Below are positions 5,979-43,899 of a stretch of 64,000 nucleotides of DNA, one piece after another. The stretch spans positions 168,029-232,028 of the IMG/VR virus record IMGVR_UViG_3300030329_004647; one strand, written 5' to 3'. Position 1 is the stretch's first letter. Every line of letters starts with the position of its first letter. Under the pieces are notes generated by a model. The model was not told the DNA's origin and did no database searches. It saw nothing but the letters and a program-made list of their open reading frames with translations. The position numbers and the translations under genes are program-made.

Positions 5979-6018
5979 AAGCTAATTCTTTTACTATAAA
6001 TATTAGCAACTACGCATT

Positions 6019-6042
6019 AAAAAAGGTTCAAAAAGAACCTTT
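6019..6042 (-). terminator. Intrinsic terminator
   Basis: 8-bp stem AAAGGTTC/GAACCTTT with 5-nt loop, running into a U-tract on the minus strand, just after the stop at 6067. Confidence 0.7.
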
Positions 6043-6066
6043 CTTATATAAATTAGAATAAATAAC

Positions 6067-6675
6067 TTAATCTTCGTCTGTAATCTTATATTCTAGCTCC
6101 TGTCCTACAAGAGGTTCTTCTTTTTCAATCTCTATATCAACTTCGGATTCTTCTTCAGTTGGTGGAGTCATCATTTCCTCATATTGTGTTAGTAAGTTTT
6201 GAACACCTCTACCAAACAAATCTTCATTACCTATATTATCTCTAAGGTCAAAAATATCTTGTACTAGTCTATCTTGAGGAGAAATAGCCACCTCTGTTTC
6301 TTCCATTACTCTATGGACTATTCTTTTAAGTGTAGACTCATTTATTTTTACAACTTTTTTAGATTCATTCATTCCTAATCCTTTAAATGTTCCATATCCT
6401 TCAGAGTTTTCATTTTTACCCTCAACCTCCATTTCTTTCATTTCTTCCATTTCAGTTTTTTCAGTATCCTCCATTTCAGCTATCTCATCAGCTATTTTTC
6501 GTTGTGCTTTTGTTAACTCCTTAATGTCTGCGTTATACTTACCATGATTTTTTAAACCTTCTTTTGCAATCTTAAGAGCGTTGTATGCTGCTTTTAAGTC
6601 TGTTTTAGTATTCTTTGAATCACCCTCGTATAGGTTCATTAGAGTTTTACGTAGTTTAGATTTTATATTTTCCAT
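6067..6675 (-). CDS. Acidic hypothetical protein, probable head-internal/virion protein
   Basis: Likely start is ATG 6675 (MENIKSKLRK), which follows a TATTTAT motif, rather than 6723. Contains KKVVKINESTLKRIVHRVMEE. Confidence 0.6.
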   Translation of the reverse strand: MENIKSKLRKTLMNLYEGDSKNTKTDLKAAYNALKIAKEGLKNHGKYNADIKELTKAQRKIADEIAEMEDTEKTEMEEMKEMEVEGKNENSEGYGTFKGLGMNESKKVVKINESTLKRIVHRVMEETEVAISPQDRLVQDIFDLRDNIGNEDLFGRGVQNLLTQYEEMMTPPTEEESEVDIEIEKEEPLVGQELEYKITDED

Positions 6676-6924
6676 ACTGTTGTGTTTTAATAATAAATAT
6701 TTACTACACCAATAAAGATACATTAGGATTATAGTATAAATTTTTTCTTTATAAAAAAGCGGTATTTAATTATAATATTTTAATCACATTTAGAGCTAGT
6801 CTTTAAAAAGTAAAAAACAATAAAAAAATAGTTAAGTTTGTCGTAAAAATATTAACAACAGAAATAGTAACATAGCTAAACTTATGACAATTAGCTGTAA
6901 TTAAATAAAAATCACCCTAAAACC

Positions 6925-6952
6925 TTGACTTATTTTACGACAATTTTATATT
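6925..6952 (+). promoter_or_regulatory. Sigma70-like promoter in divergent intergenic region
   Basis: TTGACT (6925-6930), 16 bp, TATATT (6947-6952); the spacer holds one arm of an 11-bp inverted repeat. Confidence 0.4.
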
Positions 6953-7158
6953 AAAACTTGGAAAAATTAGAGTAAATTAGTGAAAATAATGGAAAATAAT
7001 TGATATTAAAAAAAATACGTCTAACGTGTGTATAAACGTAAGTTTTTTAATAATTAAAATTAAGTTTGTATTATTGACTACTATGGTTGGGGTTAAAATA
7101 TGGGTTTTTAGTAATAATAACGGGTATTTATGACTACCAATAACAGTTATAAAAAATA

Positions 7159-7389
7159 GTGATTATGGATTCAGTATTTAAGTATGTAAATGGTTTTATT
7201 AGTGGAGTTGGAAGTCTTTTTATGGCTTTCATACCAGTAACGATTCTATGGTATGTATTGACTGGCGGTGCTGTGTTTAACATGGACGTAGTAGGAAACT
7301 TAACAAATCTTCTAACAAGTTTAGGTGACGGAGGTTTTGTTGGTTTAGTAGTATTAGTTATTCTAGCATCCTTTTTTACAAAAAAGTAA
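7159..7389 (+). CDS. Small membrane protein (2-3 hydrophobic helices)
   Basis: 76 aa with hydrophobic segments (GSLFMAFIPVTILWYVL; GFVGLVVLVILASFF) ending KK. Confidence 0.75.
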   Translation: MIMDSVFKYVNGFISGVGSLFMAFIPVTILWYVLTGGAVFNMDVVGNLTNLLTSLGDGGFVGLVVLVILASFFTKK

Positions 7390-7984: not shown

Positions 7985-8010
7985 AACCCTGACGACGGTC
8001 AGGGTTTTTT
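7985..8010. terminator. Intrinsic terminator between convergent OMP and SOD genes
   Basis: AACCCTGAC-GACG-GTCAGGGTT then TTTT; perfect 9-bp stem. Confidence 0.85.
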
Positions 8011-8662
8011 ATTGCTTAGACTTTAAAGTATCACTAACATTATTCCAGTTAACAACTTTCCAGAAATTTTTTATATATTTTTTTCTATCGGACATGTAAT
8101 TAAGGTAATAAGCGTGTTCCCACACATCTAAACCTAGTAGAGGTTCCCCTAATCCTTCCATTAAAGGATTATCTTGATTGGGTGTTGTAACTATTTTAAG
8201 TCGTCCATTTTTTAACACCAACCAACACCAACCAGAACCAAATACTTTACCTGACTCTTCGTCAAACTGTCTTTTAAAATTATCAAGACTACCAAAATCT
8301 TTATTTATTTTTTGTCTTAGTTCTTTAGACAAGTCTGTTTTGTTGGGGGTGATATAATCTTTAAAAAATAAACTATGATTATAATACCCACCAGCATTAT
8401 TCCTAGTAAAAGTATCATAATTTTTAATACCTTTAATAATTTTTTCTATGTCTTTTGGTGGGTTTTTTCTTTTAGATAGAGCTTCATTTAGTTTTGTTGT
8501 ATACCCCTTATAATGTTTATTATAATGTTCCCACATTGTTTCATAACCCACGAAATCTTTAACAGAATTATAATCATATGGTAGACTAACCCTCTTAAAA
8601 AATGATTTTTTAGCTTCCGCTATAATATTTTCGTTTAATATTTTCTTAATTAAATTTCTCAT
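8009..8662 (-). CDS. sodA: Superoxide dismutase, Mn-type signature
   Basis: Metal ligands in EHYNKH, NNAGGYYNH and DVWEHAYY, plus FGSGWCWL and NQDNP. GG..NH together with QD is the Mn-SOD pattern. Has a ~20-aa extra N-terminal leader. Confidence 0.93.
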   Translation of the reverse strand: MRNLIKKILNENIIAEAKKSFFKRVSLPYDYNSVKDFVGYETMWEHYNKHYKGYTTKLNEALSKRKNPPKDIEKIIKGIKNYDTFTRNNAGGYYNHSLFFKDYITPNKTDLSKELRQKINKDFGSLDNFKRQFDEESGKVFGSGWCWLVLKNGRLKIVTTPNQDNPLMEGLGEPLLGLDVWEHAYYLNYMSDRKKYIKNFWKVVNWNNVSDTLKSKQ

Positions 8663-9114
8663 TGTTTACTAACTTTTTGCCAATAAGGTGACCTTAAAAG
8701 TACTGGGTACAGCTTTTTAGCTATCTCTTTGAATACTTTATTAATATTATCCATGTCGTCAACGTCTTTTTTATTGTCATGAACAAATCTAAGAGCCGCT
8801 CTAGTAAAAATATCTCTTATCTCTTGTGCATTATCCCATAAATATTTAACAGGACCCTCTTGGTCCTCAAAAAAAGAATCTGTATTATAATCGCCAGTTT
8901 CCTTTCCTCGATTTAAAATATCAGAAGAAAAATGATGCTCCAAATTAGACTTACCGTCTGTTAAAAATGGTGAAAGGTCGGTCATTAACATATTATAAGC
9001 ACCCCATAGTCTAAGCTGTTCAATATATCTAGAGACCTCAAAACGGTCTTTTGTTGGTAGTAGTTCTAAAGCATCGTAATTATCTATTAGGTAGTCTATA
9101 TCTGATTTTGACAT
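8659..9114 (-). CDS. Hypothetical protein
   Basis: 151-aa ORF; its stop overlaps the SOD start (ATGA overlap), consistent with translational coupling. Confidence 0.7.
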   Translation of the reverse strand: MSKSDIDYLIDNYDALELLPTKDRFEVSRYIEQLRLWGAYNMLMTDLSPFLTDGKSNLEHHFSSDILNRGKETGDYNTDSFFEDQEGPVKYLWDNAQEIRDIFTRAALRFVHDNKKDVDDMDNINKVFKEIAKKLYPVLLRSPYWQKVSKQ

Positions 9115-9144
9115 ATAAATTAAGTTTAGTTTTTAAATAAATAT

Positions 9145-10878: not shown

Positions 10879-10932
10879 TATATACAAATATAATAAATTC
10901 TCTAATATAAACAATTAAGTATTTATCTATAT

Positions 10933-11451
10933 ATGGCAAAACAGAAAAAAATACCTATTACAAGGATATCTCGATTTTTTGGGTCGGAAGATTTTGACCT
11001 AGAACAACAAATGGGGATGGAATGGTTACATGGTGACATGCATTTCACATTAGTATTATTTAGGGTAGATAGAAGACAATCAGACGTAGATGATGTTTAT
11101 GGTGAATCAGGTCCAGAAGAAATTAGATATTTTGCTCCTGTAGAATTTAACGCTTACGTCAAAATAGATGAACCACAAAATAAAAGCTACGCCGATGGAC
11201 TTGTAAATCAGATGGAGCCAGGAAATCTTACCTTTGGTGTTTATACTAAACATTTAGATGAATTAGATATTGATATTTCTTATGGTGATTACATTGGTTA
11301 TCAAGAAACCGAAGATAGGATGAGATATTATAGTGTAACTAATGATGGAAGAGTAACATCCGATTTAAAACACACCATTGGTGGATACAAACCTTTTTAT
11401 AGGACAATAAAATGTGCTTACGTAACACCAAATCAATTTAAAGGAATATAA
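10933..11451 (+). CDS. Neck/head-closure protein (T4 gp14-like)
   Basis: DDVYGES...APVEFNAYV...FGVYTKHLDELDIDISYGDYI pattern; sits next to the gp15-like gene. Confidence 0.65.
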   Translation: MAKQKKIPITRISRFFGSEDFDLEQQMGMEWLHGDMHFTLVLFRVDRRQSDVDDVYGESGPEEIRYFAPVEFNAYVKIDEPQNKSYADGLVNQMEPGNLTFGVYTKHLDELDIDISYGDYIGYQETEDRMRYYSVTNDGRVTSDLKHTIGGYKPFYRTIKCAYVTPNQFKGI

Positions 11452-12721: not shown

Positions 12722-12827
12722 TATTCATACTTTACAATAAATAGTACGTTTTTAGCAATACCTTTTCGGTTGGGAAAAAGTATTTATCTAATGATAAAAT
12801 AAATTTATTTAGTAAAAAAAGACAAAT

Positions 12828-15800
12828 ATGGCTAACGGTAATAATAGAGTATTCGTATCTCCAGGGGTATACACCTCGGAAAAAGATTTAAGTTTTGTAG
12901 CACAGAGTGTTGGTGTTACAACATTAGGTTTGGTCGGAGAGACCAAAAAAGGGCCAGCTTTTGAACCAATCTTTGTAAGTAATTATAGTGACTTTACAAC
13001 TAGATTTGGTAGTACATCAGCTGACAAATTTGTTGATACACAAATTCCTAAACACGAATTAGCATTTATAGCAAAATCTTACTTATCACAATCAAATCAA
13101 TTGTTTGTGACAAGAGTATTAGGATTAAATGGTTATGATGCAGGACCATCTTGGTCAATAACAACAATCGGTGAAGTAGACCCACTATACGTTTCTGCTG
13201 CAACATCAGCTCAAACAACGAGTAACTGGAGTGACATTATTTACATTCCAATGACCTCAACTACCGCTACGCCAGACGGAATATATTTAACATATAACTC
13301 TGCGACAGGAAAGTTTAGTGACCCTATCACTGATATGACAACATTTGGGGGTGCCAATTTCCCAATTCAAAATTACCAACTAACAGGCCAAACATTTATT
13401 AATGGGTATGGAACTACTTTAGGTACTTTTATTGATGAAATAACCTCTTTTGTTAACACAGTAAATGGTGGGGACAATATGTCTTGGGATGGTTCAGGAC
13501 TAAGTCAATACTGGTATTATGGTGTATTAGGTACAGGAACAACTGTTGGTGGTGAAGGAGCAAATAGTTTTTGTGAACATTACGCTAACACGTGGATGAC
13601 AGGTAATACATCAGGATTATCCATTCAAGCAATAGACCATGAAAATAGATTAGCTGTTGACGCTTCAAACTTCTATGATGACCAAAATGATGGTTGGTAT
13701 GACACTTTATTCGAGTATGAATATGGTGAAGGTGCTAACTGTTACTGTACTTCTTATTCAGGTTCTTCATTTGATATGTTTGGTTATTCAGCTTTAACAG
13801 CTCAAACATATATAGATGAAGTTGACTTAAGTACTAGTGGAGCAAGTACATTCTTTGCTGGTGGACAATTTAATAATGACCCAACATCAGGAGGAACAAG
13901 TACAGAATGGTCAGGAGCTACAGGAGTAAATGGAACAGGTGGACAAGCTGTAATATCGTTTACGGCTACTAGTAGTGGTGGTCCAGAAACTTGGGCATAC
14001 AGAATTGGTTCAACATCAGCTAACGCAACAGGTGTAGTAGCTAATGTATGGAGTTCCCTATACCAAACACCAGTGGGAACATATGATAGTATAGGACCTG
14101 TAACGACACATCCTTATGTACCATCTGATTTTGACGAGGTATTATCAGGAGGAACAGCATCCACAACAACAGTATTAAAGAGTAATCCATATCCAGTACC
14201 ATTAACGCCATTCGATTTCGCGAAGAGTGGTACAACTTGTGATACTAGTATAGGAGCTTACTCAGCTGTTTCAGTAATTTATAGTGGATTTGCTAATATT
14301 GGTAGTTTAGTAGGTGGTAACTTAGGTGGAGCAGGAACTGGATTCGACCAAGGTAATCTATCTTCAGGTATTTCACATACCTTTGTTGGTTTCTCTGGAG
14401 CTGACGGACCAAACTCATATTCTGGGACACTTGCTGTTAATATGGTATTCTATAGTGCTGATTGTCAATCACAAAATCTGTTAACATTACAATTAAGTGG
14501 TTGTGCAGCTGAATATCAAAATGTAAGTGCAGACACTGAATATCACAACTTAGTAGTGGCAACAATGAGAGCTAGAGGACAAAGTTCACTTTCTACAGGA
14601 GGACCAGTCTATACAATTAGTGGTTCATCATCATCCTCAACAGGAGCTTACGGTGATGTAACATTTAATTGTTTAGGAGCTTACCAACCAATAGTTGATG
14701 ACCCATTCTTTAATTTTGGTATAAGTGCTAGAACGGATGGTGGAGCAACATATAACTTTGATGTGAGCATGAATACATCATCTAAAAATTACCTACCAAA
14801 AGTATTAGGTAGAAATGTATTTGATAAAAAAATGGAGGAAGTTCCTATTTTTGTTGAGGAAGTTTACCCTAATATCCTAAAATATGGATTTAATAGAAAT
14901 AGAATTAGAGGCCTAAACTGTTGTTTATTAAAATTACCAGCAGCAAGATGGAACAATACAGGTATGGATTCTATAGGTTGGTACATGCAACAATGGCAAA
15001 CACCAGAAACACCTTACGTAGTTTCAGAATTACGAGGTGAGGATGTATATAGACTATTTAAATTTGTTTCTATTTCAGACGGTACAGAAGCAAATAGAGA
15101 ATATAAAGTATCAATTATAAACATTTCATTTGAAAGATTAGAGTTTGATGTATTAGTTAGAGATTTCTATGATAGTGACGCTAGTCCTGTTGTTTATGAA
15201 AAATTCACAAGATGTAGTTTAGACCCATCATTACCTTCTTTTATAGGAAGAAAAATAGGTACTTCAGATGGTCAATACGAATTAAGGTCTAAATACACAA
15301 TGTTATATTTAACTGAAGAGGTTTTAGATGGAACACTTAAAGACGCTGTTCCAGCAGGTTTTGATTACTACGATTTTAGAAATTATGAAAACGGTGCTGG
15401 TAAAACGTGTAGAGCTATTCCACCGATGTTAAAATATAAAACAAAATACTTTACGGCTGGAGAAGTAGTTTATGACCCACCTTATGATAACGCTGACGGA
15501 AGTGCTAACTCTTATATATCACCAGGTGACAATGTGAGAAAAACATATTTAGGTATTTCTGACACAGTAGGTGCAGCTATAGATTTTGATTTCTTCGAGT
15601 ATAAAGGTAAGAAAACACCAGTATCGGTTTGTACAGATGTTAATGGTGTAAGTTGGGGAACAATCAGAAAAGGTTTCCATATGGATTCAGGAGCTACAAT
15701 AATTGTTGCGGGTTCTGGAACGTATATAACACAATCGGGTACAACTCTTAGTGGTGACTCTATCTTTGAGGTGGGAGCAGCAGACTTTAGAGGTGAACCA

Positions 15801-16913
15801 GCATCAAGTAATCACCCATACAAAAAACTAAATTCTCGTAAATTTACTTTAGCACCTTATGGTGGTTTTGATGGATGGGATGAATACCGTAAGTTTAGAA
15901 GTAATGGTGATTCCTATAGACTTGGACTACAAGGATTCTTAAATGGAGCGTGTAATGACGCGGTTTACCCGTCAGCTGTAGGAGACGGTTCATTTAAAGC
16001 TCTAAGTAGTACTGAAGCAAATACGGATTATTTTGCATACCTTAGAGGTGTACAAACATTCCAAAACCCAGAAGCGGTTAATATTAATGTATTTGCTACA
16101 CCAGGTATTGACTACGTTAACAACCAATCTCTAGTTAAAGAATCTATAGATATGGTAGAAAGTCAAAGAGCTGACTCGTTATATATTACGACAACACCTG
16201 ACTTTAACATGTACGTACCAACATCTTCAGATGTGACAAATCAAATATCACCAACAGAAGCTGGAGATAATTTAGAGGACTCACTAATAGATTCTAACTA
16301 TACGGCAACGTATTATCCATGGATTTTGGTTAGAGATGACAATAGTAATAAACAAATCTATATACCACCAACATCAGAGGTTACTAGAAACTTAGCATTA
16401 ACTGATAATGTAGCATTCCCTTGGTTCGCTTCAGCAGGTTATACACGTGGTTTAGTAAACGCACAAAGAGCTAGAAGAAAACTGACTCAGGACGAAAGAG
16501 ATACGTTATATGTTGATAGAATTAACCCAATAGCGACATTCTCAGATGTAGGACCAATTATTTTTGGACAGAAAACTCTACAAATTAAAGAGTCTGCTCT
16601 TGACAGAATTAATGTTAGAAGATTATTATTACAAACAAGAAAACTAATTTCCGCGGTAGCTGTTAGACTACTATTCGAACAAAATGATGATGTAGTAAGA
16701 CAACAATTCTTAGACCTAGTTAACCCTATATTAGATTCTATTAGAAGAGATAGAGGTTTAACAGACTTTAGAGTTGTACTTTCTAACGACCCAGAAGAAA
16801 TTGATAGAAATGAATTAAATGGTAAGATTTACTTAAAACCTACAAGAGCGTTAGAGTTTATCTTCATAGAATTCTTGATAACACCAACTGGAGCAGAATT
16901 TGAATCAGTTTAA
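12828..16913 (+). CDS. Contractile tail sheath protein (T4 gp18-like), unusually large
   Basis: N-terminal FVSPGVYTSEKDLS...GPAFEP and C-terminal NINVFATPG...YYPW...WFASAG...DRINVRRLL...IYLKPTRALEFIFIEF. Confidence 0.96.
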   Translation: MANGNNRVFVSPGVYTSEKDLSFVAQSVGVTTLGLVGETKKGPAFEPIFVSNYSDFTTRFGSTSADKFVDTQIPKHELAFIAKSYLSQSNQLFVTRVLGLNGYDAGPSWSITTIGEVDPLYVSAATSAQTTSNWSDIIYIPMTSTTATPDGIYLTYNSATGKFSDPITDMTTFGGANFPIQNYQLTGQTFINGYGTTLGTFIDEITSFVNTVNGGDNMSWDGSGLSQYWYYGVLGTGTTVGGEGANSFCEHYANTWMTGNTSGLSIQAIDHENRLAVDASNFYDDQNDGWYDTLFEYEYGEGANCYCTSYSGSSFDMFGYSALTAQTYIDEVDLSTSGASTFFAGGQFNNDPTSGGTSTEWSGATGVNGTGGQAVISFTATSSGGPETWAYRIGSTSANATGVVANVWSSLYQTPVGTYDSIGPVTTHPYVPSDFDEVLSGGTASTTTVLKSNPYPVPLTPFDFAKSGTTCDTSIGAYSAVSVIYSGFANIGSLVGGNLGGAGTGFDQGNLSSGISHTFVGFSGADGPNSYSGTLAVNMVFYSADCQSQNLLTLQLSGCAAEYQNVSADTEYHNLVVATMRARGQSSLSTGGPVYTISGSSSSSTGAYGDVTFNCLGAYQPIVDDPFFNFGISARTDGGATYNFDVSMNTSSKNYLPKVLGRNVFDKKMEEVPIFVEEVYPNILKYGFNRNRIRGLNCCLLKLPAARWNNTGMDSIGWYMQQWQTPETPYVVSELRGEDVYRLFKFVSISDGTEANREYKVSIINISFERLEFDVLVRDFYDSDASPVVYEKFTRCSLDPSLPSFIGRKIGTSDGQYELRSKYTMLYLTEEVLDGTLKDAVPAGFDYYDFRNYENGAGKTCRAIPPMLKYKTKYFTAGEVVYDPPYDNADGSANSYISPGDNVRKTYLGISDTVGAAIDFDFFEYKGKKTPVSVCTDVNGVSWGTIRKGFHMDSGATIIVAGSGTYITQSGTTLSGDSIFEVGAADFRGEPASSNHPYKKLNSRKFTLAPYGGFDGWDEYRKFRSNGDSYRLGLQGFLNGACNDAVYPSAVGDGSFKALSSTEANTDYFAYLRGVQTFQNPEAVNINVFATPGIDYVNNQSLVKESIDMVESQRADSLYITTTPDFNMYVPTSSDVTNQISPTEAGDNLEDSLIDSNYTATYYPWILVRDDNSNKQIYIPPTSEVTRNLALTDNVAFPWFASAGYTRGLVNAQRARRKLTQDERDTLYVDRINPIATFSDVGPIIFGQKTLQIKESALDRINVRRLLLQTRKLISAVAVRLLFEQNDDVVRQQFLDLVNPILDSIRRDRGLTDFRVVLSNDPEEIDRNELNGKIYLKPTRALEFIFIEFLITPTGAEFESV

Positions 16914-17280: not shown

Positions 17281-17337
17281 TATAACCATATAGTTTATGT
17301 AAGTTGTATTAACAAAATGTTTTAATATTTATAAGAT

Positions 17338-18198: not shown

Positions 18199-18268
18199 AA
18201 ACAAGAAAGTTTTCAAATATAGATATATTTATAATAGTAAATAAAAGAAATTTTTAAAAATACACAAT

Positions 18269-18757
18269 ATGGCTGATTTATTAATGAAAATGCCCGTTCC
18301 TTATGAACCGAAAAGAAAGAATCGGTTTATTTTGAGATTTGATTCTTCACTGGGTTTAAACGAGTGGTACGTTGAAAGTACATCAAGACCACAAGTAACA
18401 ATAAATTCTGTAGAAATACCTTTCCTAAACACATCTACTTATGTGGCAGGAAGATTTACATGGAATACTGTTAATGTAACATTCAGAGACCCAATCGGTC
18501 CTTCAGCAGCACAAGCGTTGATGGAGTGGGTTAGACTACACGCTGAGTCAGTTACTGGTAGAATGGGATATGCTGCGGGATATAAGAAAAATATCGATTT
18601 AGAATTATTAGACCCTACAGGAGTTGTTGTAGAAAAATGGGTAATGCAAGGTGTATTTTTAACAGATGTTAATTTTAATGACTTATCTTATAGTGATGAC
18701 GGACTATCTAACATTTCTGCTACACTAAGACCAGACAGATGTATATTAGTTTACTAA
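18269..18757 (+). CDS. Tail tube protein (T4 gp19-like)
   Basis: YEPKRKNRFILRF...RPQV...GRFTWNTVNVTFRDP...LDPTGVVVEKW; 162 aa. Confidence 0.92.
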   Translation: MADLLMKMPVPYEPKRKNRFILRFDSSLGLNEWYVESTSRPQVTINSVEIPFLNTSTYVAGRFTWNTVNVTFRDPIGPSAAQALMEWVRLHAESVTGRMGYAAGYKKNIDLELLDPTGVVVEKWVMQGVFLTDVNFNDLSYSDDGLSNISATLRPDRCILVY

Positions 18758-20421: not shown

Positions 20422-20458
20422 AAATATCTTTGTAAATATTTATCAATAAAGATTTAAT

Positions 20459-22417: not shown

Positions 22418-22442
22418 TTAAAATTAATAAAATAAAAAATAT

Positions 22443-32996: not shown

Positions 32997-33026
32997 TTGA
33001 CATTTTATAAAATAACAAATATTTAT
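32997..33026 (+). promoter_or_regulatory. Composite promoter: TTGACA plus TATTTAT motif
   Basis: TTGACA (32997-33002), 17 bp, TATTTAT (33020-33026); ATG at 33043. Confidence 0.5.
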
Positions 33027-33042: not shown

Positions 33043-33279
33043 ATGATTAATCAAGATTTAAAATCAAAGTTAGATAATTTCCTAGGAAAGGACACCAACA
33101 TATCAGAAATTTCTAGTAATCCTGAAAGTGAAGAGGTGTGTGATTTAGATACGGGTATCTGTTATACTGTAAGAACTAGAGATGGTCTTATTGAAAGAGT
33201 TGAAAATAGTGTTAGAGTTAATAGAAAAATAAATGTAGAGTCACCAAGTGGTGATGTTAAACAACTTTTAAATGGATAA
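33043..33279 (+). CDS. Hypothetical protein
   Basis: 78 aa containing EEVCDLDTGICY; overlaps the next gene by 8 nt. Confidence 0.7.
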   Translation: MINQDLKSKLDNFLGKDTNISEISSNPESEEVCDLDTGICYTVRTRDGLIERVENSVRVNRKINVESPSGDVKQLLNG

Positions 33280-34072: not shown

Positions 34073-34100
34073 ATATAGACATCATTTTTACCCCAACTAG

Positions 34101-34129
34101 TTGACATTACCATAACACTTTATTATTCT
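34101..34129 (+). promoter_or_regulatory. Sigma70-like promoter for replication operon
   Basis: TTGACA (34101-34106), 17 bp, TATTCT (34124-34129); upstream of the SSB gene. Confidence 0.65.
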
Positions 34130-34186
34130 TTTTATAGATTATATTATGTATAAAAATTATGTATTAAAAAAGAAAATTAAAAAGTT

Positions 34187-37536: not shown

Positions 37537-38940
37537 ATGACTATTTATAATAACACAAATATGAGCAACGATATGACAGAAAATTTTGGATATTTAGGAT
37601 ACGTTTTCCAACAGAAACTTTTAAATATAATCATAACAGACAACTCATTTGCACAGTCAATTCTAGACGTTATTAAAGCAAAATATTTTGATAACCAATA
37701 TTTTAGATTAATAGTACAAATGATAAAAGAATATTATGAGACTTATGAAACTACACCTTCTTTTGATGGGTTAGACCAACTTACTAGGTTAGAGATTAGT
37801 TCTGAAATGGCAAGAAAATGTGTTTTTGATATGCTAAAAGAAATTAAAGACGCATCATTTGAAGACCATAACTTTATTAAAGAAAAATCTATAAAATTCT
37901 GTAAACAACAAGAACTAAAAAAGGCTATTAAAAAAGTAGAGTCTATTATGGAACAAGGAGATTTTGAAAGTTATGACAAATGTGAAGAATTTATTAGAGA
38001 TGCAATTCAAATAGGTGAAACTGATTCTAATAGCTTTGAAGTATTTAATGATTTAGAGGAAGTTTTAAGGGAAGATTACCGTCATCCTATCCCTACGGGG
38101 TTAAATGGGATAGATAATCTACTTAATGGGGGTCTAGCAAAAGGTGAAATTGGTGTTATACTAGCACCTACAGGAGTAGGAAAAACAACAATATTAACTA
38201 GATTCGCGAATACAGCTTATAATTTAGGTTATAATGTTTTACAAATATTTTTTGAAGACAATCCTAAAATCATACAAAGGAAACATTTTACTTGTTGGAC
38301 AGGTATAGTACCAGACGAACTTAGTAAACATAAAGAGGAAGTATTAAAAAAAGCTAGTGAAATAAAAAAGAATGGTGGTAGATTAGTATTAAAAAAATTA
38401 CCATCAGACGAACTAAATATATTACAAATAAAACACCAGTTAAGAAAACTTATTTCAGAAGGAATGAAAATTGACATGGTGGTTATTGACTATATAGACT
38501 GTGTCCTTCCAGATAGAAAACATAATGATGAATGGAAAGGAGAAGGTTCAGTAATGAGAAAATTTGAAGGTATGTGTCATGAATTAAATTTAGTAGGATG
38601 GACAGCTACACAAGGTAATAGGTCCTCTATTTCTTCAGAAGTTGTAACTACAGACCAAATGGGTGGTTCTATAAAGAAAGCTCAAGTGGGGCATGTCATA
38701 ATTTCAGTCGCTAAAACTCTACAACAAAAAGAAATGGGTCTAGCGACAATAGCACTAACAAAATCCAGATTAGGGCAAGATGGTATTATTTTTGAGAATT
38801 GTAAATTTGACAATTCTTTATTAGAAATAGATACCGAACAATCACAAACATTTTTAGGTTTCGAAGAAGACAAAACAGAAAGAAACCGACAAAGAGTATT
38901 AGACGCTCTACAAAGAAGAGAGAGAATAGTAAAACAATAA
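37537..38940 (+). CDS. dnaB: Replicative DNA helicase (DnaB/T4 gp41-like)
   Basis: IPTGLNGIDNLLNGGL, Walker A APTGVGKT, Walker B VVIDY, TATQGNR, KSRLG. True start may be ATG 37561. Confidence 0.93.
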   Translation: MTIYNNTNMSNDMTENFGYLGYVFQQKLLNIIITDNSFAQSILDVIKAKYFDNQYFRLIVQMIKEYYETYETTPSFDGLDQLTRLEISSEMARKCVFDMLKEIKDASFEDHNFIKEKSIKFCKQQELKKAIKKVESIMEQGDFESYDKCEEFIRDAIQIGETDSNSFEVFNDLEEVLREDYRHPIPTGLNGIDNLLNGGLAKGEIGVILAPTGVGKTTILTRFANTAYNLGYNVLQIFFEDNPKIIQRKHFTCWTGIVPDELSKHKEEVLKKASEIKKNGGRLVLKKLPSDELNILQIKHQLRKLISEGMKIDMVVIDYIDCVLPDRKHNDEWKGEGSVMRKFEGMCHELNLVGWTATQGNRSSISSEVVTTDQMGGSIKKAQVGHVIISVAKTLQQKEMGLATIALTKSRLGQDGIIFENCKFDNSLLEIDTEQSQTFLGFEEDKTERNRQRVLDALQRRERIVKQ

Positions 38941-38967: not shown

Positions 38968-40872
38968 ATGGAGATTTCGAATAAAATTTTGTCTGATATT
39001 ACTGTTTACATGAAGTACGCAAAATATCTACCAGAACTAAACAGAAGAGAAACTTGGGAAGAGTTAGTAACGAGAAATAAAAATATGCACATCAAAAAGT
39101 ATCCACACTTAAAAGAGGATATTGAGGAGAAGTATAAGTTTGTTTATGATAAGAAGGTATTGCCATCTATGAGGTCTATGCAATTTGGTGGAAAACCAAT
39201 TGAGATAAGCCCAAATAGAATTTATAATTGTGCATATATGCCAATTGACCATATAGATTCTTTTGCTGAATGTATGTTCTTATTATTAGGAGGTACGGGA
39301 GTAGGTTATTCCGTACAAAAACACCACGTAGCTAAATTACCCGTAATTCAAAAACCATACCCAAAAAGAAAACGTAGATTTTTAATCGGTGACTCAATCG
39401 AAGGTTGGGCGGACTCGATTAAAGTTCTTATGAAATCATACATGAATGGTGGAGGAAGTAGAGTGGAATTTGATTATTCAGATATTAGACCTAAAGGAGC
39501 AAGATTAATCACATCAGGTGGTAAAGCACCAGGCCCACAACCATTAAAGGAGTGTCTGGTTAAAATAGAAGGATTATTAAACGCAAAAGAAAATGGAGAA
39601 CAACTTACAACAATTGAGGTACATGATATTATATGTTATATCGCAGACGCGGTATTGGCCGGAGGTATTCGTAGAGCAGCTCTTATTAGTTTATTTAGCG
39701 CTGATGACGATGCAATGATTGGATGTAAAGCTGGTAACTGGTGGGAACTAAACCCACAACGTGGTAGAGCAAATAACTCAGCTGTATTGATGAGACATAA
39801 GATAACTCAAGAATTTTTCTGGGAATTATGGAAAAGAGTTGAACTATCAGGAGCAGGAGAACCAGGAATATATTTCAATAATGATAAAGATTGGGGCACA
39901 AATCCTTGTTGTGAGATTGCTTTAAGACCCTATCAGTTCTGTAACTTATGTGAAGTAAATGTTTCAAACATTGAGTCCCAAGAAGATTTAAATATAAGAG
40001 TTAAAGCAGCGGCATTTATCGGAACACTTCAGGCAGGATATACAGCTTTTCATTATTTAAGAGATGTGTGGAGAGAGACAACAGAGAAAGATGCACTAAT
40101 TGGTGTTTCAATGACAGGTATTGGTTCAGGTAAAGTTCTTAATTATGATATGAAAAAAGCTGCTAGTTTAGTAAAAAGAGAAAATACCAGAGTATCTAAA
40201 TTACTAGGAATTAATCAAGCAGCAAGAACAACCACGGTTAAACCAGCTGGAACTACTTCATTAACGTTAGGAACATCATCAGGTATTCATGCGTGGCATA
40301 ATGATTTCTATATTAGAAGATTACGTGTTGGTAAAAATGAAGCGATTTATTCTTATCTTTCACAAAATCATCCAGAATTAGTGGAGGATGAATATTTCAG
40401 ACCACACGACACAGCAGTAATTAGTATACCACAAAAAGCACCTAAAGGTTCAATAATGAGAACAGAGTCACCATTTGATTTATTAGAAAGAGTTAAAAAA
40501 GTAGCTACTGAATGGGTTAACTCTGGACATAGAAAAGGTTCTAACTCTCATAATGTATCTGCAACTATTTCTCTAAAAGAAGGTGAGTGGTTATCAGCAG
40601 GTAAATGGATGTGGGAAAATAGAAAATATTATAATGGGTTATCTGTACTACCATATAATGGTGGAACTTATACACAAGCTCCATTTGAAGATATTACCGA
40701 AGAAAAATATAATGAAATGATGAAGTCATTAAAAGATGTAAATCTATCTAATGTGGTAGAGTTAGACGATAATACAGATTTATCAGGAGAATTAGCCTGT
40801 TCGGGAGGAAGTTGTGAAATTGATGTAGATTTAAAAACTATAGAAAAGGAAGAAGAGCTTGATGAAGCATAG
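38968..40872 (+). CDS. nrdJ: Ribonucleotide reductase, class II (adenosylcobalamin-dependent)
   Basis: RIYNCAY, GTNPCCEI, CNL, TTVKPAGT, C-terminal ACSGGSC. No C-terminal YY pair and no adjacent nrdB. Confidence 0.9.
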   Translation: MEISNKILSDITVYMKYAKYLPELNRRETWEELVTRNKNMHIKKYPHLKEDIEEKYKFVYDKKVLPSMRSMQFGGKPIEISPNRIYNCAYMPIDHIDSFAECMFLLLGGTGVGYSVQKHHVAKLPVIQKPYPKRKRRFLIGDSIEGWADSIKVLMKSYMNGGGSRVEFDYSDIRPKGARLITSGGKAPGPQPLKECLVKIEGLLNAKENGEQLTTIEVHDIICYIADAVLAGGIRRAALISLFSADDDAMIGCKAGNWWELNPQRGRANNSAVLMRHKITQEFFWELWKRVELSGAGEPGIYFNNDKDWGTNPCCEIALRPYQFCNLCEVNVSNIESQEDLNIRVKAAAFIGTLQAGYTAFHYLRDVWRETTEKDALIGVSMTGIGSGKVLNYDMKKAASLVKRENTRVSKLLGINQAARTTTVKPAGTTSLTLGTSSGIHAWHNDFYIRRLRVGKNEAIYSYLSQNHPELVEDEYFRPHDTAVISIPQKAPKGSIMRTESPFDLLERVKKVATEWVNSGHRKGSNSHNVSATISLKEGEWLSAGKWMWENRKYYNGLSVLPYNGGTYTQAPFEDITEEKYNEMMKSLKDVNLSNVVELDDNTDLSGELACSGGSCEIDVDLKTIEKEEELDEA

Positions 40873-41053: not shown

Positions 41054-41282
41054 CGATTGGATAACAGAGTTATACCACCAAGAAGGAAGAAAAGTAGAAT
41101 TTAATCAAAAAGATTTTTATAAAAGCAAGGAAGGGGCTATGGTAATGACAGAGGATTATCATATTCGGAGAGGTAGTTGTTGTGGTAGTGGATGTAAACA
41201 TTGTCCATACTGGCCACCACATCAAAAGATGAATAGAGAGTTAAGAGAGGATTTAAAATCAAAAGACCACAGACTTATATAA
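41040..41282 (+). CDS. Small Cys-rich protein (DUF5522-like)
   Basis: VMTEDYHIRRGSCCGSGCKHCPY. Confidence 0.75.
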   Translation: MIRNDDWITELYHQEGRKVEFNQKDFYKSKEGAMVMTEDYHIRRGSCCGSGCKHCPYWPPHQKMNRELREDLKSKDHRLI

Positions 41283-41302
41283 CAATTATATATTTATAAT
41301 AG

Positions 41303-41503
41303 ATGAAACCATTAATTAAAAAGGTATTAAGAGAATATTGGGAAAAAGAACCAGATAAATGGGATTTGGTAGCTGAGGACCTTAAAGAATGCCTAGAAAA
41401 TATAATTCAAAAACATAAATCTAATTTTTATGACGACCAGTACGCGGTAATCAGTGCTATAGAGGATATAATGGAGAATATGTTCGCAAAAGTACCACGA
41501 TAG
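41303..41503 (+). CDS. Hypothetical protein with leader motif
   Basis: 66 aa starting MKPLIKKVLRE; preceded by TATTTAT (41291-41297). Confidence 0.65.
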   Translation: MKPLIKKVLREYWEKEPDKWDLVAEDLKECLENIIQKHKSNFYDDQYAVISAIEDIMENMFAKVPR

Positions 41504-41525
41504 GTATTTATAATAAAAACCAATT

Positions 41526-41987
41526 ATGCCATCAAAAAGATTTGGAATAGCGTTCCCATTTTCAGATAGTCCAGACGGATTATTTTTGAAAACTACTAAA
41601 ACACCTTCAGAAGAATTACGTGCTAATTTTATTCATTTAATACTTACTAAAAAAGGTAGTAGATATTTTTTACCTGATTTTGGGACGAGATTAATGGAAT
41701 ATGTTTTCGACCAATTGGATGAACCTACACTCAAGGCTATAGAATCAGAACTACAAGATGCGGTAGATAAGTACCTACCAAACCTACAAATTTTAGGTAT
41801 ACACGTTACCATTTTAAAAGACGCTAACGACGCAGAACTAAATCCAGTAATAAATAGTGATGAAGATGCTAGAGTTTTTAGAGTAGCTGGAACATCTGCT
41901 CAGGAACACACAGCTAAAATTAGAATAGAATATACTTTAAAAGATAATGTTTTTCAAACTAAAGACTTTGTAATTATTAATATATAA
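41526..41987 (+). CDS. Baseplate wedge protein (T4 gp25/GPW-like)
   Basis: FGIAFPF...HLILTKKGSRYFLPDFGTRLMEYVFD. Confidence 0.9.
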   Translation: MPSKRFGIAFPFSDSPDGLFLKTTKTPSEELRANFIHLILTKKGSRYFLPDFGTRLMEYVFDQLDEPTLKAIESELQDAVDKYLPNLQILGIHVTILKDANDAELNPVINSDEDARVFRVAGTSAQEHTAKIRIEYTLKDNVFQTKDFVIINI

Positions 41988-41988
41988 T

Positions 41989-43827
41989 ATGGCACAGAAA
42001 AAAATATCATATACGGAAAGAGATTTTTTGGGTCTAAGGAATGAACTTCTAAGACTAACAAATATCTATTACCCTGATTTAATTCAAGACGCGAGTGACG
42101 CTTCTATATATTCTTTATTTCTAGATTTAAATGCGGCGGTAGCAGACAATTTACACTATAGTATTGATAGAAGTTTACAAGAAACGGTTTTACAATTTGC
42201 CCAGGAAAGAAGTTCTTTATATAATATAGCTAGAACTTATGGTTTAAAAATACCAGGCAAAAGACCATCTGTTGCTTTATGTGACTTATCGGTTATTGTA
42301 CCAGCCAGAGGAGACCAAGAAGATACTAGATATCTTGGATTATTAAAAAGTGGTTCACAATTTAGAGGAGCGGGACAAGTTTTCGAACTTGTAAACGACT
42401 GTGATTTTTCTTCCCAATATTCCGTAGACGGTACACCTAATAGAACAAAAATACCTAATTTAGACGCTAACGGGATAATTGTTAATTATACCATTACAAA
42501 AAGAGAACCGGTAGTTAACGGAGTTACAAGAATCTTTAAAAAAGAAATAAGAGATATTGATTCTAAACCATTCTTTAAACTATTTCTTCCAGAAAGAAAT
42601 GTGTTAGGAGTTACAAATGTGATATATAAAGAGGGTACAAACTTCCAGTCTTTACCTTCTGGTTTAGAATTCATCAACTCACCTAACAAGTATTATGAAA
42701 TGCAGGCTCTTGCGGAACAAGATGTTTTTATTATAAATCCATCGATGCCTGCGGATGATGCTGGACTAAAAGTCGGTAACTATATCCAAACAGATAATAG
42801 GTTTATTACAGAACATACACCTGAAGGTTACTTCTTTTTAACTTTTGGTGGTGGTAATAATACACCACAAGAGTTATTGGACGATTTTAGTAGGTATGGA
42901 ATGCCTTTAGATTTAAATAGATTTATGAATACAGCCTCTATGGGTACCGCTGTTAGACCTAACACTACTATTTTTGTACAATATAGAGTTGGTGGTGGTA
43001 CCACATCCAATGTTGGTGCTGGAGCTATAAATTCTGTAGGTGTAATAGATTTTGTGGTTTATGGCCCAAATACAACTCAAAATAATAGAGTCATAAATAG
43101 TTTAGCTGTAAACAATGTTACAGCAGCTGTAGGTGGAGCAGACCAAATGACAGAAGAAGAAGTTAGAAATTACGTTTCTTTTAATTTTGCTGGACAAAAT
43201 AGAGCGGTAACTATTAATGATTATGTAAATAAAATCAGAACAATGCCTGCAGTATTTGGAGCTGCTGCTAAAGTAGGTGTTACTGAGATTGAAAATAAAG
43301 TTAAAATAGATATTTTATCATATAACCCAGATGGTACACTAACCTCTAATGTTAGTAATACACTTAAAAGTAATATAGTAACGTATCTATCCAACTATAG
43401 AATGTTAAATGATTATATAGAAATTGCTTCTGGTAATGTAATCGATTTAGCTTTTGAGGTTGATTTAATTATTGAACAAGGAGTAAATCAGTCTGAAATA
43501 ATAACTAATGTCATAACTAAAGTAGGTGATTACTTTGGTGTGAGTAAAGTTGAAATGGGAGCGCCTGTTAATATGGGTAACCTAAGAAGACAGATAATGG
43601 AACAACCAGGAGTAATAAACATAGTAGATATTAAAGTATTTAATAAGGTGGGTAATGGATACTCAAGCAGTGAAATTAGTCAAGCATATGTAGACCCAGA
43701 AACTAAACAAATAGCTTTAATTGACGAGACTATTTTTCTACAACCAAACGAGATAGCAGCCATCCGAGTACCGCAAGTAGACATCAACGTTAGATTTAAA
43801 CAACCTAGCCAACCTATAATATATTAG
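41989..43827 (+). CDS. Baseplate wedge protein (T4 gp6/baseplate J-like)
   Basis: ISYTERDFLGLRNEL...AQERSSLYNIARTYGLK...YRVGGG...GGADQ...QNRAVTINDY. Confidence 0.9.
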   Translation: MAQKKISYTERDFLGLRNELLRLTNIYYPDLIQDASDASIYSLFLDLNAAVADNLHYSIDRSLQETVLQFAQERSSLYNIARTYGLKIPGKRPSVALCDLSVIVPARGDQEDTRYLGLLKSGSQFRGAGQVFELVNDCDFSSQYSVDGTPNRTKIPNLDANGIIVNYTITKREPVVNGVTRIFKKEIRDIDSKPFFKLFLPERNVLGVTNVIYKEGTNFQSLPSGLEFINSPNKYYEMQALAEQDVFIINPSMPADDAGLKVGNYIQTDNRFITEHTPEGYFFLTFGGGNNTPQELLDDFSRYGMPLDLNRFMNTASMGTAVRPNTTIFVQYRVGGGTTSNVGAGAINSVGVIDFVVYGPNTTQNNRVINSLAVNNVTAAVGGADQMTEEEVRNYVSFNFAGQNRAVTINDYVNKIRTMPAVFGAAAKVGVTEIENKVKIDILSYNPDGTLTSNVSNTLKSNIVTYLSNYRMLNDYIEIASGNVIDLAFEVDLIIEQGVNQSEIITNVITKVGDYFGVSKVEMGAPVNMGNLRRQIMEQPGVINIVDIKVFNKVGNGYSSSEISQAYVDPETKQIALIDETIFLQPNEIAAIRVPQVDINVRFKQPSQPIIY

Positions 43828-43899
43828 GTATTTACTTAAGCACCCCTAATTTTATCTTTAATTATTGAAGGAATAAATATTTATTCTTAAAGACACAGA

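What the first reader, a model, noticed from the sequence alone, without database searches (positions are those of the whole stretch)
5996..43884. TATTTAT motif heads nearly every structural transcription unit: a late promoter that is the reverse complement of the T4 late box core
Seen on the coding strand about 5-45 nt before starts. Plus strand: 7125, 10920, 12781, 17326, 18226, 20437, 33020, 37542, 41291, 41505, 43878. Minus strand (ATAAATA on +): 5996, 6693, 9137, 12737. That is 15 sites, mostly right after a terminator or strand switch. Known: T4 gp55 late promoters are TATAAATA on the coding strand, and ATAAATA is the reverse complement of TATTTAT. Inference: a distinct phage sigma factor or RNAP recognises this element.
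Basis: partly seen in the sequence, partly recalled or inferred. Interest (0 to 1): 0.7.

Follow-up and report, generated by a model that had tools for sequence, protein, structure and literature searches.

The report
Variant T4-type late promoter box TATTTAT
A seven-letter DNA signal, TATTTAT, marks the start of most virus-particle gene units in this 232-kb marine phage and its many uncultured relatives; it is most likely a variant of the classic phage T4 late promoter, read by a divergent phage-encoded sigma factor.

Summary
All 15 cited sites exist. The heptamer is not over-represented in the window overall (36 copies against about 52 by chance), but its placement is far from random. In the window, 12 of the 36 copies lie within 45 nt upstream of a same-strand ORF (0.5 expected). 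Across the 232-kb genome it is the most enriched upstream heptamer (69 of 241 genes against 6.4 expected). It is strand-specific, occurs about once per transcription unit, tolerates no mismatch and is avoided inside genes. It is also enriched in 80 related loci and in Microcystis phage Mel-JY01. It heads the terminase, portal, capsid, sheath, baseplate and lysin-like units, and a few others such as the DnaB/RNR unit. Lone accessory genes instead carry host-type Bacteroidota promoters (TTTG…TAnnTTTG). The genome has one sigma-like gene, outside the window, related to T4 gp55 by sequence (weakly) and by predicted fold. I found no phage RNA polymerase, gp33 or gp45. The "reverse complement" framing is misleading: read on the same strand, TATTTAT(A) matches T4's TATAAATA at 6 of 8 positions. 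No transcription start data exist, so timing, start sites and the sigma–box link are inferred.

The parts
5996..6002 (-). TATTTAT box, 17 nt before the ATG of ORF 4848-5978(-) (376 aa, C-terminal match to a head-tail adaptor family); follows a hairpin plus T-run
6693..6699 (-). TATTTAT box, 17 nt before the second in-frame ATG (6675) of ORF 6067-6723(-); lies in a 441-nt divergent spacer
7125..7131 (+). TATTTAT box, 33 nt before small ORF 7165-7389; atypical G flanks; weakest candidate
9137..9143 (-). TATTTAT box, 22 nt before ORF 8659-9114(-), which is followed by 8009-8662(-)
10920..10926 (+). TATTTAT box, 6 nt before the ATG of ORF 10933-11451 (near-leaderless geometry); divergent from the helicase gene
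10885..10892 (-). Host-type Bacteroidota -7 box (TATATTTG), 6 nt before ATG 10878 of the phrog_62 DNA helicase gene; the contrasting promoter class
12737..12743 (-). TATTTAT box, 36 nt before small ORF ending at 12700(-); divergent partner of 12781
12781..12787 (+). TATTTAT box, 40 nt before the tail sheath gene 12828-16913
17326..17332 (+). TATTTAT-N5-ATG, ORF 17338-18198 (286 aa): leaderless-type geometry
18226..18232 (+). TATTTAT box, 36 nt before ORF 18269-18757
20437..20443 (+). TATTTAT box, 15 nt before ORF 20459-22417; heads a packed 12.5-kb unit that runs to the 2036-aa ORF ending at 32995
33020..33026 (+). TATTTAT box, 16 nt before small ORF 33043-33279, followed by 33272-34072 (weak SbcC-like match)
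37542..37548 (+). TATTTAT box, 12 nt before in-frame ATG 37561 of the DnaB-like helicase ORF (37537-38940), followed by ribonucleotide reductase 38968-40872; a non-structural unit
41291..41297 (+). TATTTAT-N5-ATG, small ORF 41303-41503
41505..41511 (+). TATTTAT box followed by an A-rich tract, 14 nt before ORF 41526-41987 and then the baseplate wedge gene 41989-43827
43878..43884 (+). TATTTAT box, 15 nt before ORF 43900-47406; heads a packed run of nine large ORFs (20 kb or more, to the window end) with no further upstream box

Best explanation
TATTTAT, with extended consensus (A/G)A-TATTTAT-(A/T), is the -10-like core of a phage-specific promoter class with no -35 element. It drives the virion, packaging and lysis (late-type) units and a few other units of a T4-related 232-kb marine myovirus. 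The most likely reader is host RNA polymerase carrying the phage's only sigma-like protein: 233 aa, genome 132924-133625(-), outside the window. Its N-terminal domain is a sigma region-2 / T4 gp55 homologue. Its conserved C-terminal domain of about 100 aa has no clear relative. Transcription would start a few nucleotides downstream of the box. That gives leaderless mRNAs (TATTTAT-N5-ATG) or very short A-rich leaders (12-16 nt to the ATG), which suits a host that lacks Shine-Dalgarno sequences. Host-type promoters (TTTG-N19-TAnnTTTG) serve a separate set of accessory genes. SHOWN: enrichment, strand bias, one box per unit, stringency, avoidance inside genes, conservation across relatives, the gene classes headed, and the existence and fold of the sigma-like protein. 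INFERRED: promoter activity itself, the transcription start positions, late timing, and that this sigma reads this box.
For: Placement and selection: it is the top upstream heptamer, 69 of 241 genes against 6.4 expected. 79 of 170 copies are intergenic against 29±5.5 in shuffles, with 46 sense and 7 antisense copies in co-directional spacers. It precedes only 4 of 113 tightly coupled genes, but 22 of 35 and 18 of 45 genes after spacers and 19 of 48 at strand switches; 18% of sites follow a terminator-like hairpin against 1.8% of random positions. All seven positions matter: 39% of consensus copies are sense-upstream, against 7.5% or less for any one-mismatch variant. Inside genes the sense strand holds 31 copies against 80±10 in codon shuffles. 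No -35-like element appears in 230 pooled sites. Gene classes: it heads the terminase (N5-ATG), portal, the unit with the major head protein, the sheath, the baseplate wedge unit, a virion/tail-spike unit and a lysin-like gene. Host-type boxes head kinase-like, peptidase, Lon-like, Mom-like/HNH and helicase genes. Conservation: in 80 related loci, 247 of 1706 genes carry it against 32 expected. In the spacer after the sigma gene, 51 of 54 distinct relatives keep an exact TATTTAT while the flanks vary. Microcystis phage Mel-JY01 (sigma 26% identical) has ATATTTAT (19 against 2.9) and TATTTATA (13 against 2.0) among its most enriched upstream 8-mers and TATAAATA only twice; there the box lies mostly 28-44 nt upstream, ahead of an SD-like GGAG. 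Reader: one sigma-like gene only. It matches phrog_234 'late sigma transcription factor' at E=4.9e-5, T4 gp55 by phmmer at E=3.4e-5 and Sigma70_r2 at E=2.3e-4, with 11 of 14 family members hitting r2. The AF2 model (pLDDT 73) aligns with T4 gp55 chain 7d7d_F at Z 8.2 over 111 residues, and with sigma-B, AlgU and SigW region 2 at Z 8.1-8.6. No RNA polymerase domains were found. The sigma gene lies at the distal end of packed arrays whose heads rarely carry the box (3 of 43), and the next gene starts with it. Known biology: T4 late promoters are an 8-bp -10 box with no -35 element, an AT-rich downstream segment, about 50 sites and either polarity (PMC2988020). Weak RNA support: metatranscriptome contigs cover the capsid unit from 72 nt inside its first ORF onward, and none covers the 236 nt upstream.
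Against: No transcription start mapping exists. The metatranscriptome contigs are sparse and unstranded, and cannot place a 5' end. Sequence evidence for gp55 homology is borderline: all hits fall on one region-2 segment, all are below Pfam's cut-off, and hhalign against the single T4 sequence gives probability 4%. The fold Z-scores of about 8 are near the tool's stated noise range for helical proteins. gp33 and gp45 homologues were not found, so the T4 activation mechanism cannot simply be transferred. The box also heads replication and nucleotide-metabolism units and the head of a 32-kb biosynthetic block that ends with the sigma gene itself. A strictly 'late' label is therefore uncertain, and expression of the sigma needs another, unidentified promoter. 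The sharp two-peak spacing to the ATG (4-5 and 12-16 nt) could also reflect an RNA-level role. CheckV rates the record only 72% complete.
Confidence: 0.7

Rival explanations
1. The box is a variant -7/-10 element read by the host's own primary sigma with no phage factor, so these are ordinary host-type promoters, perhaps early or constitutive.
For: In the leaderless-type arrangements, TATTTAT-N5-ATG and host-type TAnnTTTG-N4-ATG both place TA at about -12/-11 (register from PMC6847099). The two boxes also share T at -8 and -6.
Against: Clear host-consensus promoters (TTTG-N19-TAnnTTTG) exist separately in the same genome and head different genes. The position after TATTTAT, where the host box has its near-invariant G-5, is G in only 1 of 67 sites. 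The same box is enriched in a cyanobacterial phage, and Bacteroidota promoters differ sharply from sigma-70-type ones. The box heads virion genes. E. coli-type -35/-10 promoters are not enriched.
Confidence: 0.08
2. The motif acts in the RNA as UAUUUAU in the 5' leader, as a translation-initiation enhancer or a stability or processing signal, and is not a promoter.
For: Spacing to the ATG is sharply peaked at 4-5 and 12-16 nt. Bacteroidota lack Shine-Dalgarno sequences and rely on upstream A/U-rich context (PMC6847099).
Against: It occurs about once per unit and not once per gene: 4 of 113 tightly coupled genes. Two spacing peaks about 9 nt apart do not fit a single ribosome-positioning role. 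In Mel-JY01 it lies 28-44 nt upstream with a separate SD-like element between it and the ATG. It follows terminator-like hairpins and occupies both sides of divergent spacers. On the same strand it matches the T4 late box at 6 of 8 positions.
Confidence: 0.05
3. A phage-encoded RNA polymerase, undetected or encoded in the missing part of the genome, recognises the box, as in AR9/phiKZ-type jumbo phages. The sigma-like protein would then be its specificity subunit.
For: The genome is jumbo-sized, with many large ORFs that have no family match. The sigma-like model also aligns with a chain of the AR9 non-virion RNA polymerase holoenzyme entry 7s01 at Z 8.0. The record is estimated at 72% complete.
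Against: No Rpb2_6, Rpb1_2 or T7-type RNA polymerase domain was found in 232 kb, and the first two models did ring in all 14 control genomes. The gene content is T4-like and not phiKZ-like. Host-type promoters in the genome show that host RNA polymerase is used.
Confidence: 0.07
4. The box is the binding site of a non-sigma phage transcription factor (an activator or anti-terminator loading site) at promoters whose true core elements are degenerate. The sigma-like protein would have other targets.
For: The link between this sigma and this box rests only on co-occurrence. The sigma's C-terminal domain is of unknown type.
Against: There is no second conserved element near the box. Its position relative to leaderless ATGs matches a -10 element exactly. 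The strict one-strand orientation and the 6-of-8 identity with the gp55 box fit sigma region-2 recognition of single-stranded non-template DNA.
Confidence: 0.07

Closest known systems
Phage T4 late promoters and the gp55/gp33/gp45 late-transcription system (PMC2988020; PMC7892883)
   Same: A single, stringent, AT-only box of 7-8 bp at about -10 on the non-template strand. No -35 element. An A/T-rich segment just downstream. Tens of copies per genome, heading virion genes on either strand. A small phage protein with a sigma region-2-like domain. A T4-like gene set (sheath, baseplate wedge, portal, gp23-type head protein, terminase, UvsX, DnaB-type helicase, RNR).
   Different: The box is TATTTAT(A/T) and not TATAAATA; in the same-strand alignment the central AA is TT. 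By that alignment the change falls on -10 and -9, and -9 is one of the three bases that gp55 flips into a pocket. The sigma is 233 aa with an extra conserved C-terminal helical domain and a non-conserved extreme C-terminus. No gp33 or gp45 homologue was detectable. Many units appear leaderless. The box also heads some non-structural units.
Bacteroidota primary-sigma promoters, -33 TTTG / -7 TAnnTTTG (PMC6847099)
   Same: Present in this genome in consensus form. They share the TA start and the T-rich middle, and the same distance to leaderless ATGs as the phage box.
   Different: The phage box has A where the host box has T-7, and it avoids the near-invariant G-5 (1 of 67 sites). It has no -33 element. 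It heads different genes. It is also used by a phage of a cyanobacterium.
Late promoters of jumbo phages AR9/phiKZ, read by non-virion RNA polymerases with a sigma-like specificity subunit (PMC5312081; PMC4666361)
   Same: Short AT-rich single-element promoters without a -35 element in a jumbo phage. The AR9 holoenzyme entry aligns with the model at fold level (Z 8.0).
   Different: No phage RNA polymerase subunits were found here, and the genome is T4-like and not phiKZ-like.
Variant late boxes within the T4 family (for example Aeromonas phage Aeh1, with a/gC in place of TA at -13/-12; cited in PMC2988020)
   Same: A precedent that the late box can drift within T4-related phages while the system is kept.
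   Different: The known variants change the upstream edge of the box. This one changes the centre and is paired with a far more divergent sigma.

Membership tests
T4-type (gp55-dependent) late promoter | 8-bp box TATAAATA on the non-template strand at about -13 to -6 | tested here: not met
   The box is TATTTAT followed by A (37), T (21), C (8) or G (1) of 67 sites: 6 of 8 identity on the same strand. Sense TATAAATA occurs upstream of only 13 genes against 38 for TATTTATA.
T4-type (gp55-dependent) late promoter | No conserved -35 element | tested here: met
   No position from -60 to -7 before the box exceeds 0.25 bits in 230 pooled distinct sites.
T4-type (gp55-dependent) late promoter | A/T-rich segment immediately downstream of the box | tested here: met
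   Positions +3 to +7 after the box are 63-73% A, and with T they reach 90-94%.
T4-type (gp55-dependent) late promoter | Heads late (virion, packaging, lysis) genes, in either polarity | tested here: met
   Terminase, portal, major-head unit, sheath, baseplate wedge, virion protein and lysin-like units, on both strands. It also heads some non-structural units.
T4-type (gp55-dependent) late promoter | Transcription starts about 5-7 nt downstream of the box, late in infection | tested here: inconclusive
   Only sparse, unstranded metatranscriptome contigs are available. They are consistent but cannot map 5' ends or timing.
gp55 late sigma family (phrog_234) | Significant sequence match to the family | tested here: inconclusive
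   phrog_234 E=4.9e-5 over profile positions 68-157 of 181; T4 gp55 phmmer E=3.4e-5. hhalign against the single T4 sequence gives probability 4%, and the PDB sequence profile search misses gp55.
gp55 late sigma family (phrog_234) | Sigma region-2 homology domain | tested here: met
   Sigma70_r2 hits in 11 of 14 family members, all sub-threshold. Model residues 9-123 align to gp55 (7d7d_F) at Z 8.2 and to many sigma region-2 structures at Z 6-8.6; Foldseek's top hits are almost all sigma factors.
gp55 late sigma family (phrog_234) | Conserved C-terminal sliding-clamp-binding motif | tested here: not met
   The last 8 or so residues are unconserved in the 14-member alignment. The matches to gp55 end well before its C-terminus.
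gp55 late sigma family (phrog_234) | Partner genes gp33 (co-activator) and gp45 (clamp) in the genome | tested here: inconclusive
   phrog_254, phrog_223 and the T4 sequences find nothing. The record is about 72% complete and divergent analogues could be missed.
Two-domain sigma-70-family factor (sigma2 + sigma4, ECF-like) | Sigma region-4 helix-turn-helix domain | tested here: inconclusive
   The C-terminal domain folds confidently (pLDDT 82). Region-4 chains score only Z 4.4-5.1 among unrelated helical proteins. No Pfam region-4 hit.
Two-domain sigma-70-family factor (sigma2 + sigma4, ECF-like) | Cognate -35 promoter element | tested here: not met
   None detected.
Bacteroidota primary-sigma promoter (-33 TTTG / -7 TAnnTTTG) | T-12 A-11 ... 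T-8 T-7 T-6 G-5 box | tested here: not met
   TATTTAT has A at the T-7 position, and G follows it in 1 of 67 sites. True host-type boxes occur elsewhere in the genome: TAHHTTTG-N4-ATG at 7 genes against 0.12 expected.

The most novel reading that the evidence does not exclude
The 233-aa protein is a single-chain late sigma that unites a gp55-like region-2 domain with a C-terminal domain doing the job of gp33 or sigma region 4 (docking on the beta flap). This would be an 'unsplit' counterpart of T4's split gp55+gp33 sigma. It would work without a sliding-clamp activator, would have a re-tuned pocket that accepts T in place of A at the centre of the box, and would direct largely leaderless late mRNAs across a very abundant ocean phage clade that infects hosts of different phyla.
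Probability: 0.25. Interest if true: 0.75.

Novelty: new variant of a known kind. Interest (0 to 1): 0.55.

Why it matters
T4 late transcription (gp55/gp33/gp45 acting on TATAAATA) is a textbook system. Its box was thought to be nearly constant across T4-related phages (PMC2988020). Here a very large, uncultured and globally distributed marine clade uses a different, equally stringent box. The sigma family has at least 8000 protein clusters, all labelled hypothetical. The sigma is so divergent that annotation pipelines miss it, and there is no recognisable gp33 or gp45.

Practical value: the box gives a simple rule for delimiting late transcription units and correcting start codons in these genomes. 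It also gives a function to a widespread hypothetical protein family. A cultured phage, Microcystis phage Mel-JY01, is available in which the system can be tested.

Conceptual value: it offers a natural experiment on how sigma region-2 pockets change base specificity, and on whether clamp-coupled activation is dispensable.

Tried and rejected
1. Whole-window over-representation: rejected as a test, because the heptamer is under-represented overall. Only placement carries the signal.
2. Metatranscriptomes: two read-laying runs gave a few short unstranded contigs. These are useful only as weak consistency evidence; no transcription start sites can be derived.
3. gp45, gp33 and the gp44/62 clamp loader: T4 sequences and PHROG profiles found no gp45 or gp33, and only weak AAA+ hits for gp44.
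4. hhalign of the sigma family against the single T4 gp55 sequence: weak, probability 4%. The PDB profile search by sequence returned only chance hits.
5. Sigma region 4 for the C-terminal domain: suggested by the full-length fold search, but not upheld when the domain was modelled alone. Left as inconclusive.
6. A -35-like element: none found at fixed positions. A 4-mer scan found only GC-rich words that probably reflect upstream terminator stems.
7. The generic sigma-70 promoter and GC-rich terminator scan of the window: no enrichment of either.
8. Literature: no paper in the searchable library describes TATTTAT or TATTTATA as a phage promoter, or mentions Mel-JY01.
I re-ran it without that row.
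10. One search contained a slicing bug in one count ('31 in territory'). It was corrected (12 sites).
11. Complex prediction was not used: the host RNA polymerase is unknown, so no meaningful partner chain was available.

Full report
**What the window is.** The 64-kb window is positions 168029-232028 of a single 232,028-bp viral contig with 32% G+C. CheckV rates it about 72% complete. Its genes show a T4-related myovirus:
- In the window: tail sheath, baseplate wedge, DnaB-type helicase, ribonucleotide reductase, UvsX-like recombinase, SSB, exonuclease, DNA polymerase.
- Elsewhere in the genome: large terminase, portal, a gp23-type major head protein.

The nearest deposited phages are distant: Flavobacterium, Microcystis and Pelagibacter phages and cyanophages, at about 30-38% identity for the sheath. 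The same DNA is found in many seawater metagenomes and, in part, in marine metatranscriptomes.

**Checking the observation.** All 15 cited sites exist.
- The heptamer is not over-represented in the window: 36 copies against 52±8 in shuffles.
- Its placement is highly non-random. 12 of the 36 copies lie within 45 nt upstream of a same-strand ORF, against 0.5 expected (P=5e-14).
- The other three cited sites are explained. Site 12781 starts 47 nt before the sheath ATG. Sites 6693 and 37542 lie before the second in-frame ATG of their ORFs.
- An unbiased scan of all heptamers in the 80 nt upstream of 241 crude gene calls ranks TATTTAT first: 69 genes against 6.4 expected, P=8e-50.
- 79 of the 170 genomic copies lie in the 6% of the genome that is intergenic, against 29±5.5 when the same spacers are shuffled. 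In co-directional spacers the sense:antisense ratio is 46:7.

**Anatomy.**
- All seven positions matter. 39% of exact copies are sense-upstream, against 7.5% or less for every one-mismatch variant.
- The only extra conservation is (A/G)A just before the box, A or T but almost never G just after it (G in 1 of 67), and an A-rich run downstream.
- There is no -35-like element.
- Spacing to the ATG has two sharp modes. One is 4-6 nt (TATTTAT-N5-ATG at 11 genes here, including the terminase). The other is 12-18 nt. A tail extends to about 40 nt.
- The box is a once-per-unit element. It precedes 4 of 113 tightly coupled genes, 22 of 35 and 18 of 45 genes after real spacers, and 19 of 48 at strand switches.
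- It follows a perfect-stem hairpin plus T-run ten times more often than random positions do.
- Inside genes it is avoided on the sense strand: 31 copies against 80±10 in codon shuffles. This is what selection against spurious internal starts would produce.

**What it heads.** With the box: terminase, portal, the unit with the major head protein, tail sheath, the baseplate wedge unit, a virion/tail-spike unit, a lysin-like protein, and the 20-kb run of large ORFs that fills the right third of the window. It also heads the DnaB/RNR unit, a small-ORF/SbcC-like unit, and the head of a 32-kb packed block of glycosyltransferase/HAD-type genes. "Nearly every structural unit" is therefore fair, but "only structural" is not.

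**A second promoter class.** Lone genes, often on the opposite strand, carry consensus Bacteroidota promoters such as TATCTTTG-N19-TATCTTTG-N4-ATG. TAHHTTTG-N4-ATG occurs at 7 genes against 0.12 expected. These genes encode kinase-like, peptidase, Lon-like, Mom-like/HNH and helicase proteins. In Flavobacterium johnsoniae the -7 box occupies -12 to -5, with 4-5 nt to the start site (PMC6847099). The N4 arrangement therefore implies leaderless mRNAs and suggests a Bacteroidota host. TATTTAT-N5-ATG puts its TA in the same -12/-11 register, which is the geometry of a -10-type element. E. coli-type promoters are not enriched.

**Conservation.**
- The phage's sigma-like protein has 325 confirmed relatives in IMG/VR and at least 8000 protein clusters in the wider protein collection, all labelled hypothetical.
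- In 80 related loci (1.45 Mb; sigma 54-69% identical), TATTTAT is again among the most enriched upstream words: 247 of 1706 genes against 32 expected.
- In the short spacer between the sigma gene and the next gene, 51 of 54 distinct relatives keep an exact TATTTAT while the flanks vary. The two most divergent loci have TAATTAT there.
- The only deposited phage with a homologue is Microcystis phage Mel-JY01, at 26% identity. ATATTTAT and TATTTATA are among its most enriched upstream 8-mers, and canonical TATAAATA is nearly absent. There the box sits mostly 28-44 nt upstream, ahead of a Shine-Dalgarno-like GGAG.
- The same box in phages whose hosts appear to belong to different phyla argues for a phage-encoded reader. 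The Mel-JY01 geometry argues against a ribosome-binding role.

**The candidate reader.**
- The genome has one sigma-like gene, at 132924-133625(-), 233 aa.
- Sequence evidence is borderline but consistent: phrog_234 "late sigma transcription factor" at E=4.9e-5, T4 gp55 at E=3.4e-5, and Sigma70_r2 just under its cut-off in 11 of 14 family members.
- In the AlphaFold model (pLDDT 73), residues 9-123 align with T4 gp55 (chain F of 7d7d, identity confirmed) at Z 8.2 over 111 residues. They align with region 2 of sigma-B, AlgU, SigW and sigma-E at Z 8.1-8.6. Foldseek's top hits are almost all sigma factors.
- The conserved C-terminal domain of about 100 aa folds confidently but has no clear structural relative. 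A sigma region-4 assignment is inconclusive.
- No gp33, gp45 or phage RNA polymerase was found.
- The sigma gene lies at the far end of packed arrays whose heads rarely carry the box (3 of 43), and the next gene starts with it. This layout fits a factor made before the class it activates.

**Relation to T4.** T4 late promoters are TATAAATA at -13 to -6 with no -35 element, an AT-rich downstream segment, about 50 sites and either polarity. gp55 is a region-2 homologue, and gp33 is a sigma-4 mimic on the beta flap (PMC2988020). gp55 reads the non-template strand and flips the bases at -12, -9 and -8 into pockets (PMC7892883).
- On that same strand, TATTTAT(A) matches TATAAATA at 6 of 8 positions; only the central AA is TT.
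- By that alignment the bases at -12 and -8 are kept, and -10 and -9 change. This step is inference.

**Direct transcript evidence.** This is weak. Metatranscriptome contigs at 99% identity or more cover the capsid unit from 72 nt inside its first ORF onward, and none covers the 236 nt upstream. Run X19 holds 44% of the capsid-unit words against 6% of the sheath-region words. This is consistent with strong late-gene transcription starting near the box. It does not map a start site.

**Verdict.** The best explanation is a variant T4-type late promoter read by a divergent, phage-encoded gp55-like sigma on host RNA polymerase, with many leaderless or short-leader mRNAs.
- My rough confidence in the parts: about 0.9 that the box is a promoter core, about 0.75 that it defines a late-type class, and about 0.65 that this sigma reads it.
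- It fails strict membership of the T4 late-promoter family, because the box sequence differs. Membership of the gp55 family is partial: the region-2 domain is met, the clamp-binding tail is not met, and the partner genes were not found.
- I classify it as a new variant of a known kind, of moderate interest.

Noticed in passing
window 10885-10892(-); genome 123851(-), 125785(-), 98622(-), 95909(-), 74464(-), 4030(+), 23(+): Consensus Bacteroidota promoters (TTTG-N19-TAnnTTTG) lie 4 nt from the ATG (6 nt at the in-window site), implying leaderless mRNAs and a Bacteroidota (probably marine flavobacterial) host. TAHHTTTG-N4-ATG occurs at 7 genes against 0.12 expected.
   Followed up: partly
genome 133632-165015(-), outside the window: A 32-kb block of about 40 tightly packed minus-strand genes (glycosyltransferase, HAD hydrolase and other biosynthetic-looking genes) has no upstream TATTTAT inside it. 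It ends with the sigma-like gene. Only its head (box at 165034) carries one. How the sigma gene is first expressed is unresolved.
   Followed up: partly
whole genome: TATTTAT is strongly avoided inside genes on the sense strand (31 against 80±10 in codon shuffles) and less so on the antisense strand (49 against 73±9).
   Followed up: yes
L095:16532-17953 (genome 117402-118823): The 473-aa ORF just upstream of the major head protein gene has no PHROG match, yet shows higher metatranscriptome contig depth (up to about 25) than the head protein gene itself (3-8). It may be a scaffold or decoration protein, or a second abundant capsid protein.
   Followed up: no
window 20459-32995 and 43900-63999: Runs of very large ORFs (652, 995, 369, 104 and 2036 aa; then 1168, 593, 311, 873, 476, 305, 1000, 1178 and more than 783 aa). 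Those scanned had no PHROG match (the 104-, 2036-, 311-, 305-, 1000-, 1178- and 783-aa ORFs were not scanned). Each run lies behind a single TATTTAT box. They are presumably tail, fibre or baseplate proteins.
   Followed up: partly
window 18779-18804 and 18791-19417(-): An 11-bp-stem hairpin flanked by A and T runs (a bidirectional terminator) sits between convergent genes. The minus-strand gene is a Mom-like DNA-modification/HNH protein inserted among plus-strand late units.
   Followed up: no
L074 and L083, spacer after the sigma gene: The two most divergent relatives (sigma 54-55% identical) carry TAATTAT in place of TATTTAT at the orthologous site. This may be co-variation of box and sigma.
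   Followed up: no
Microcystis phage Mel-JY01 (L101-L110): Besides the TATTTAT box, other long words recur upstream of genes (AACAACCTAACAGGA-like, ATTAGAGA, ATACTACG). This suggests another repeated regulatory element in that phage.
   Followed up: no
window 43873-43884: The box at 43878 is part of a 12-bp palindrome (ATAAATATTTAT), so a second, minus-strand copy overlaps it. Probably incidental.
   Followed up: no
window 34073-34186: The 114-nt spacer before the SSB/UvsX/exonuclease genes has neither a TATTTAT box nor a host-type box, but has TTGACA-N17-TATTCT (10 of 12 to the sigma-70 consensus). The promoter class of the replication and recombination genes (a possible middle class) is unidentified.
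   Followed up: no
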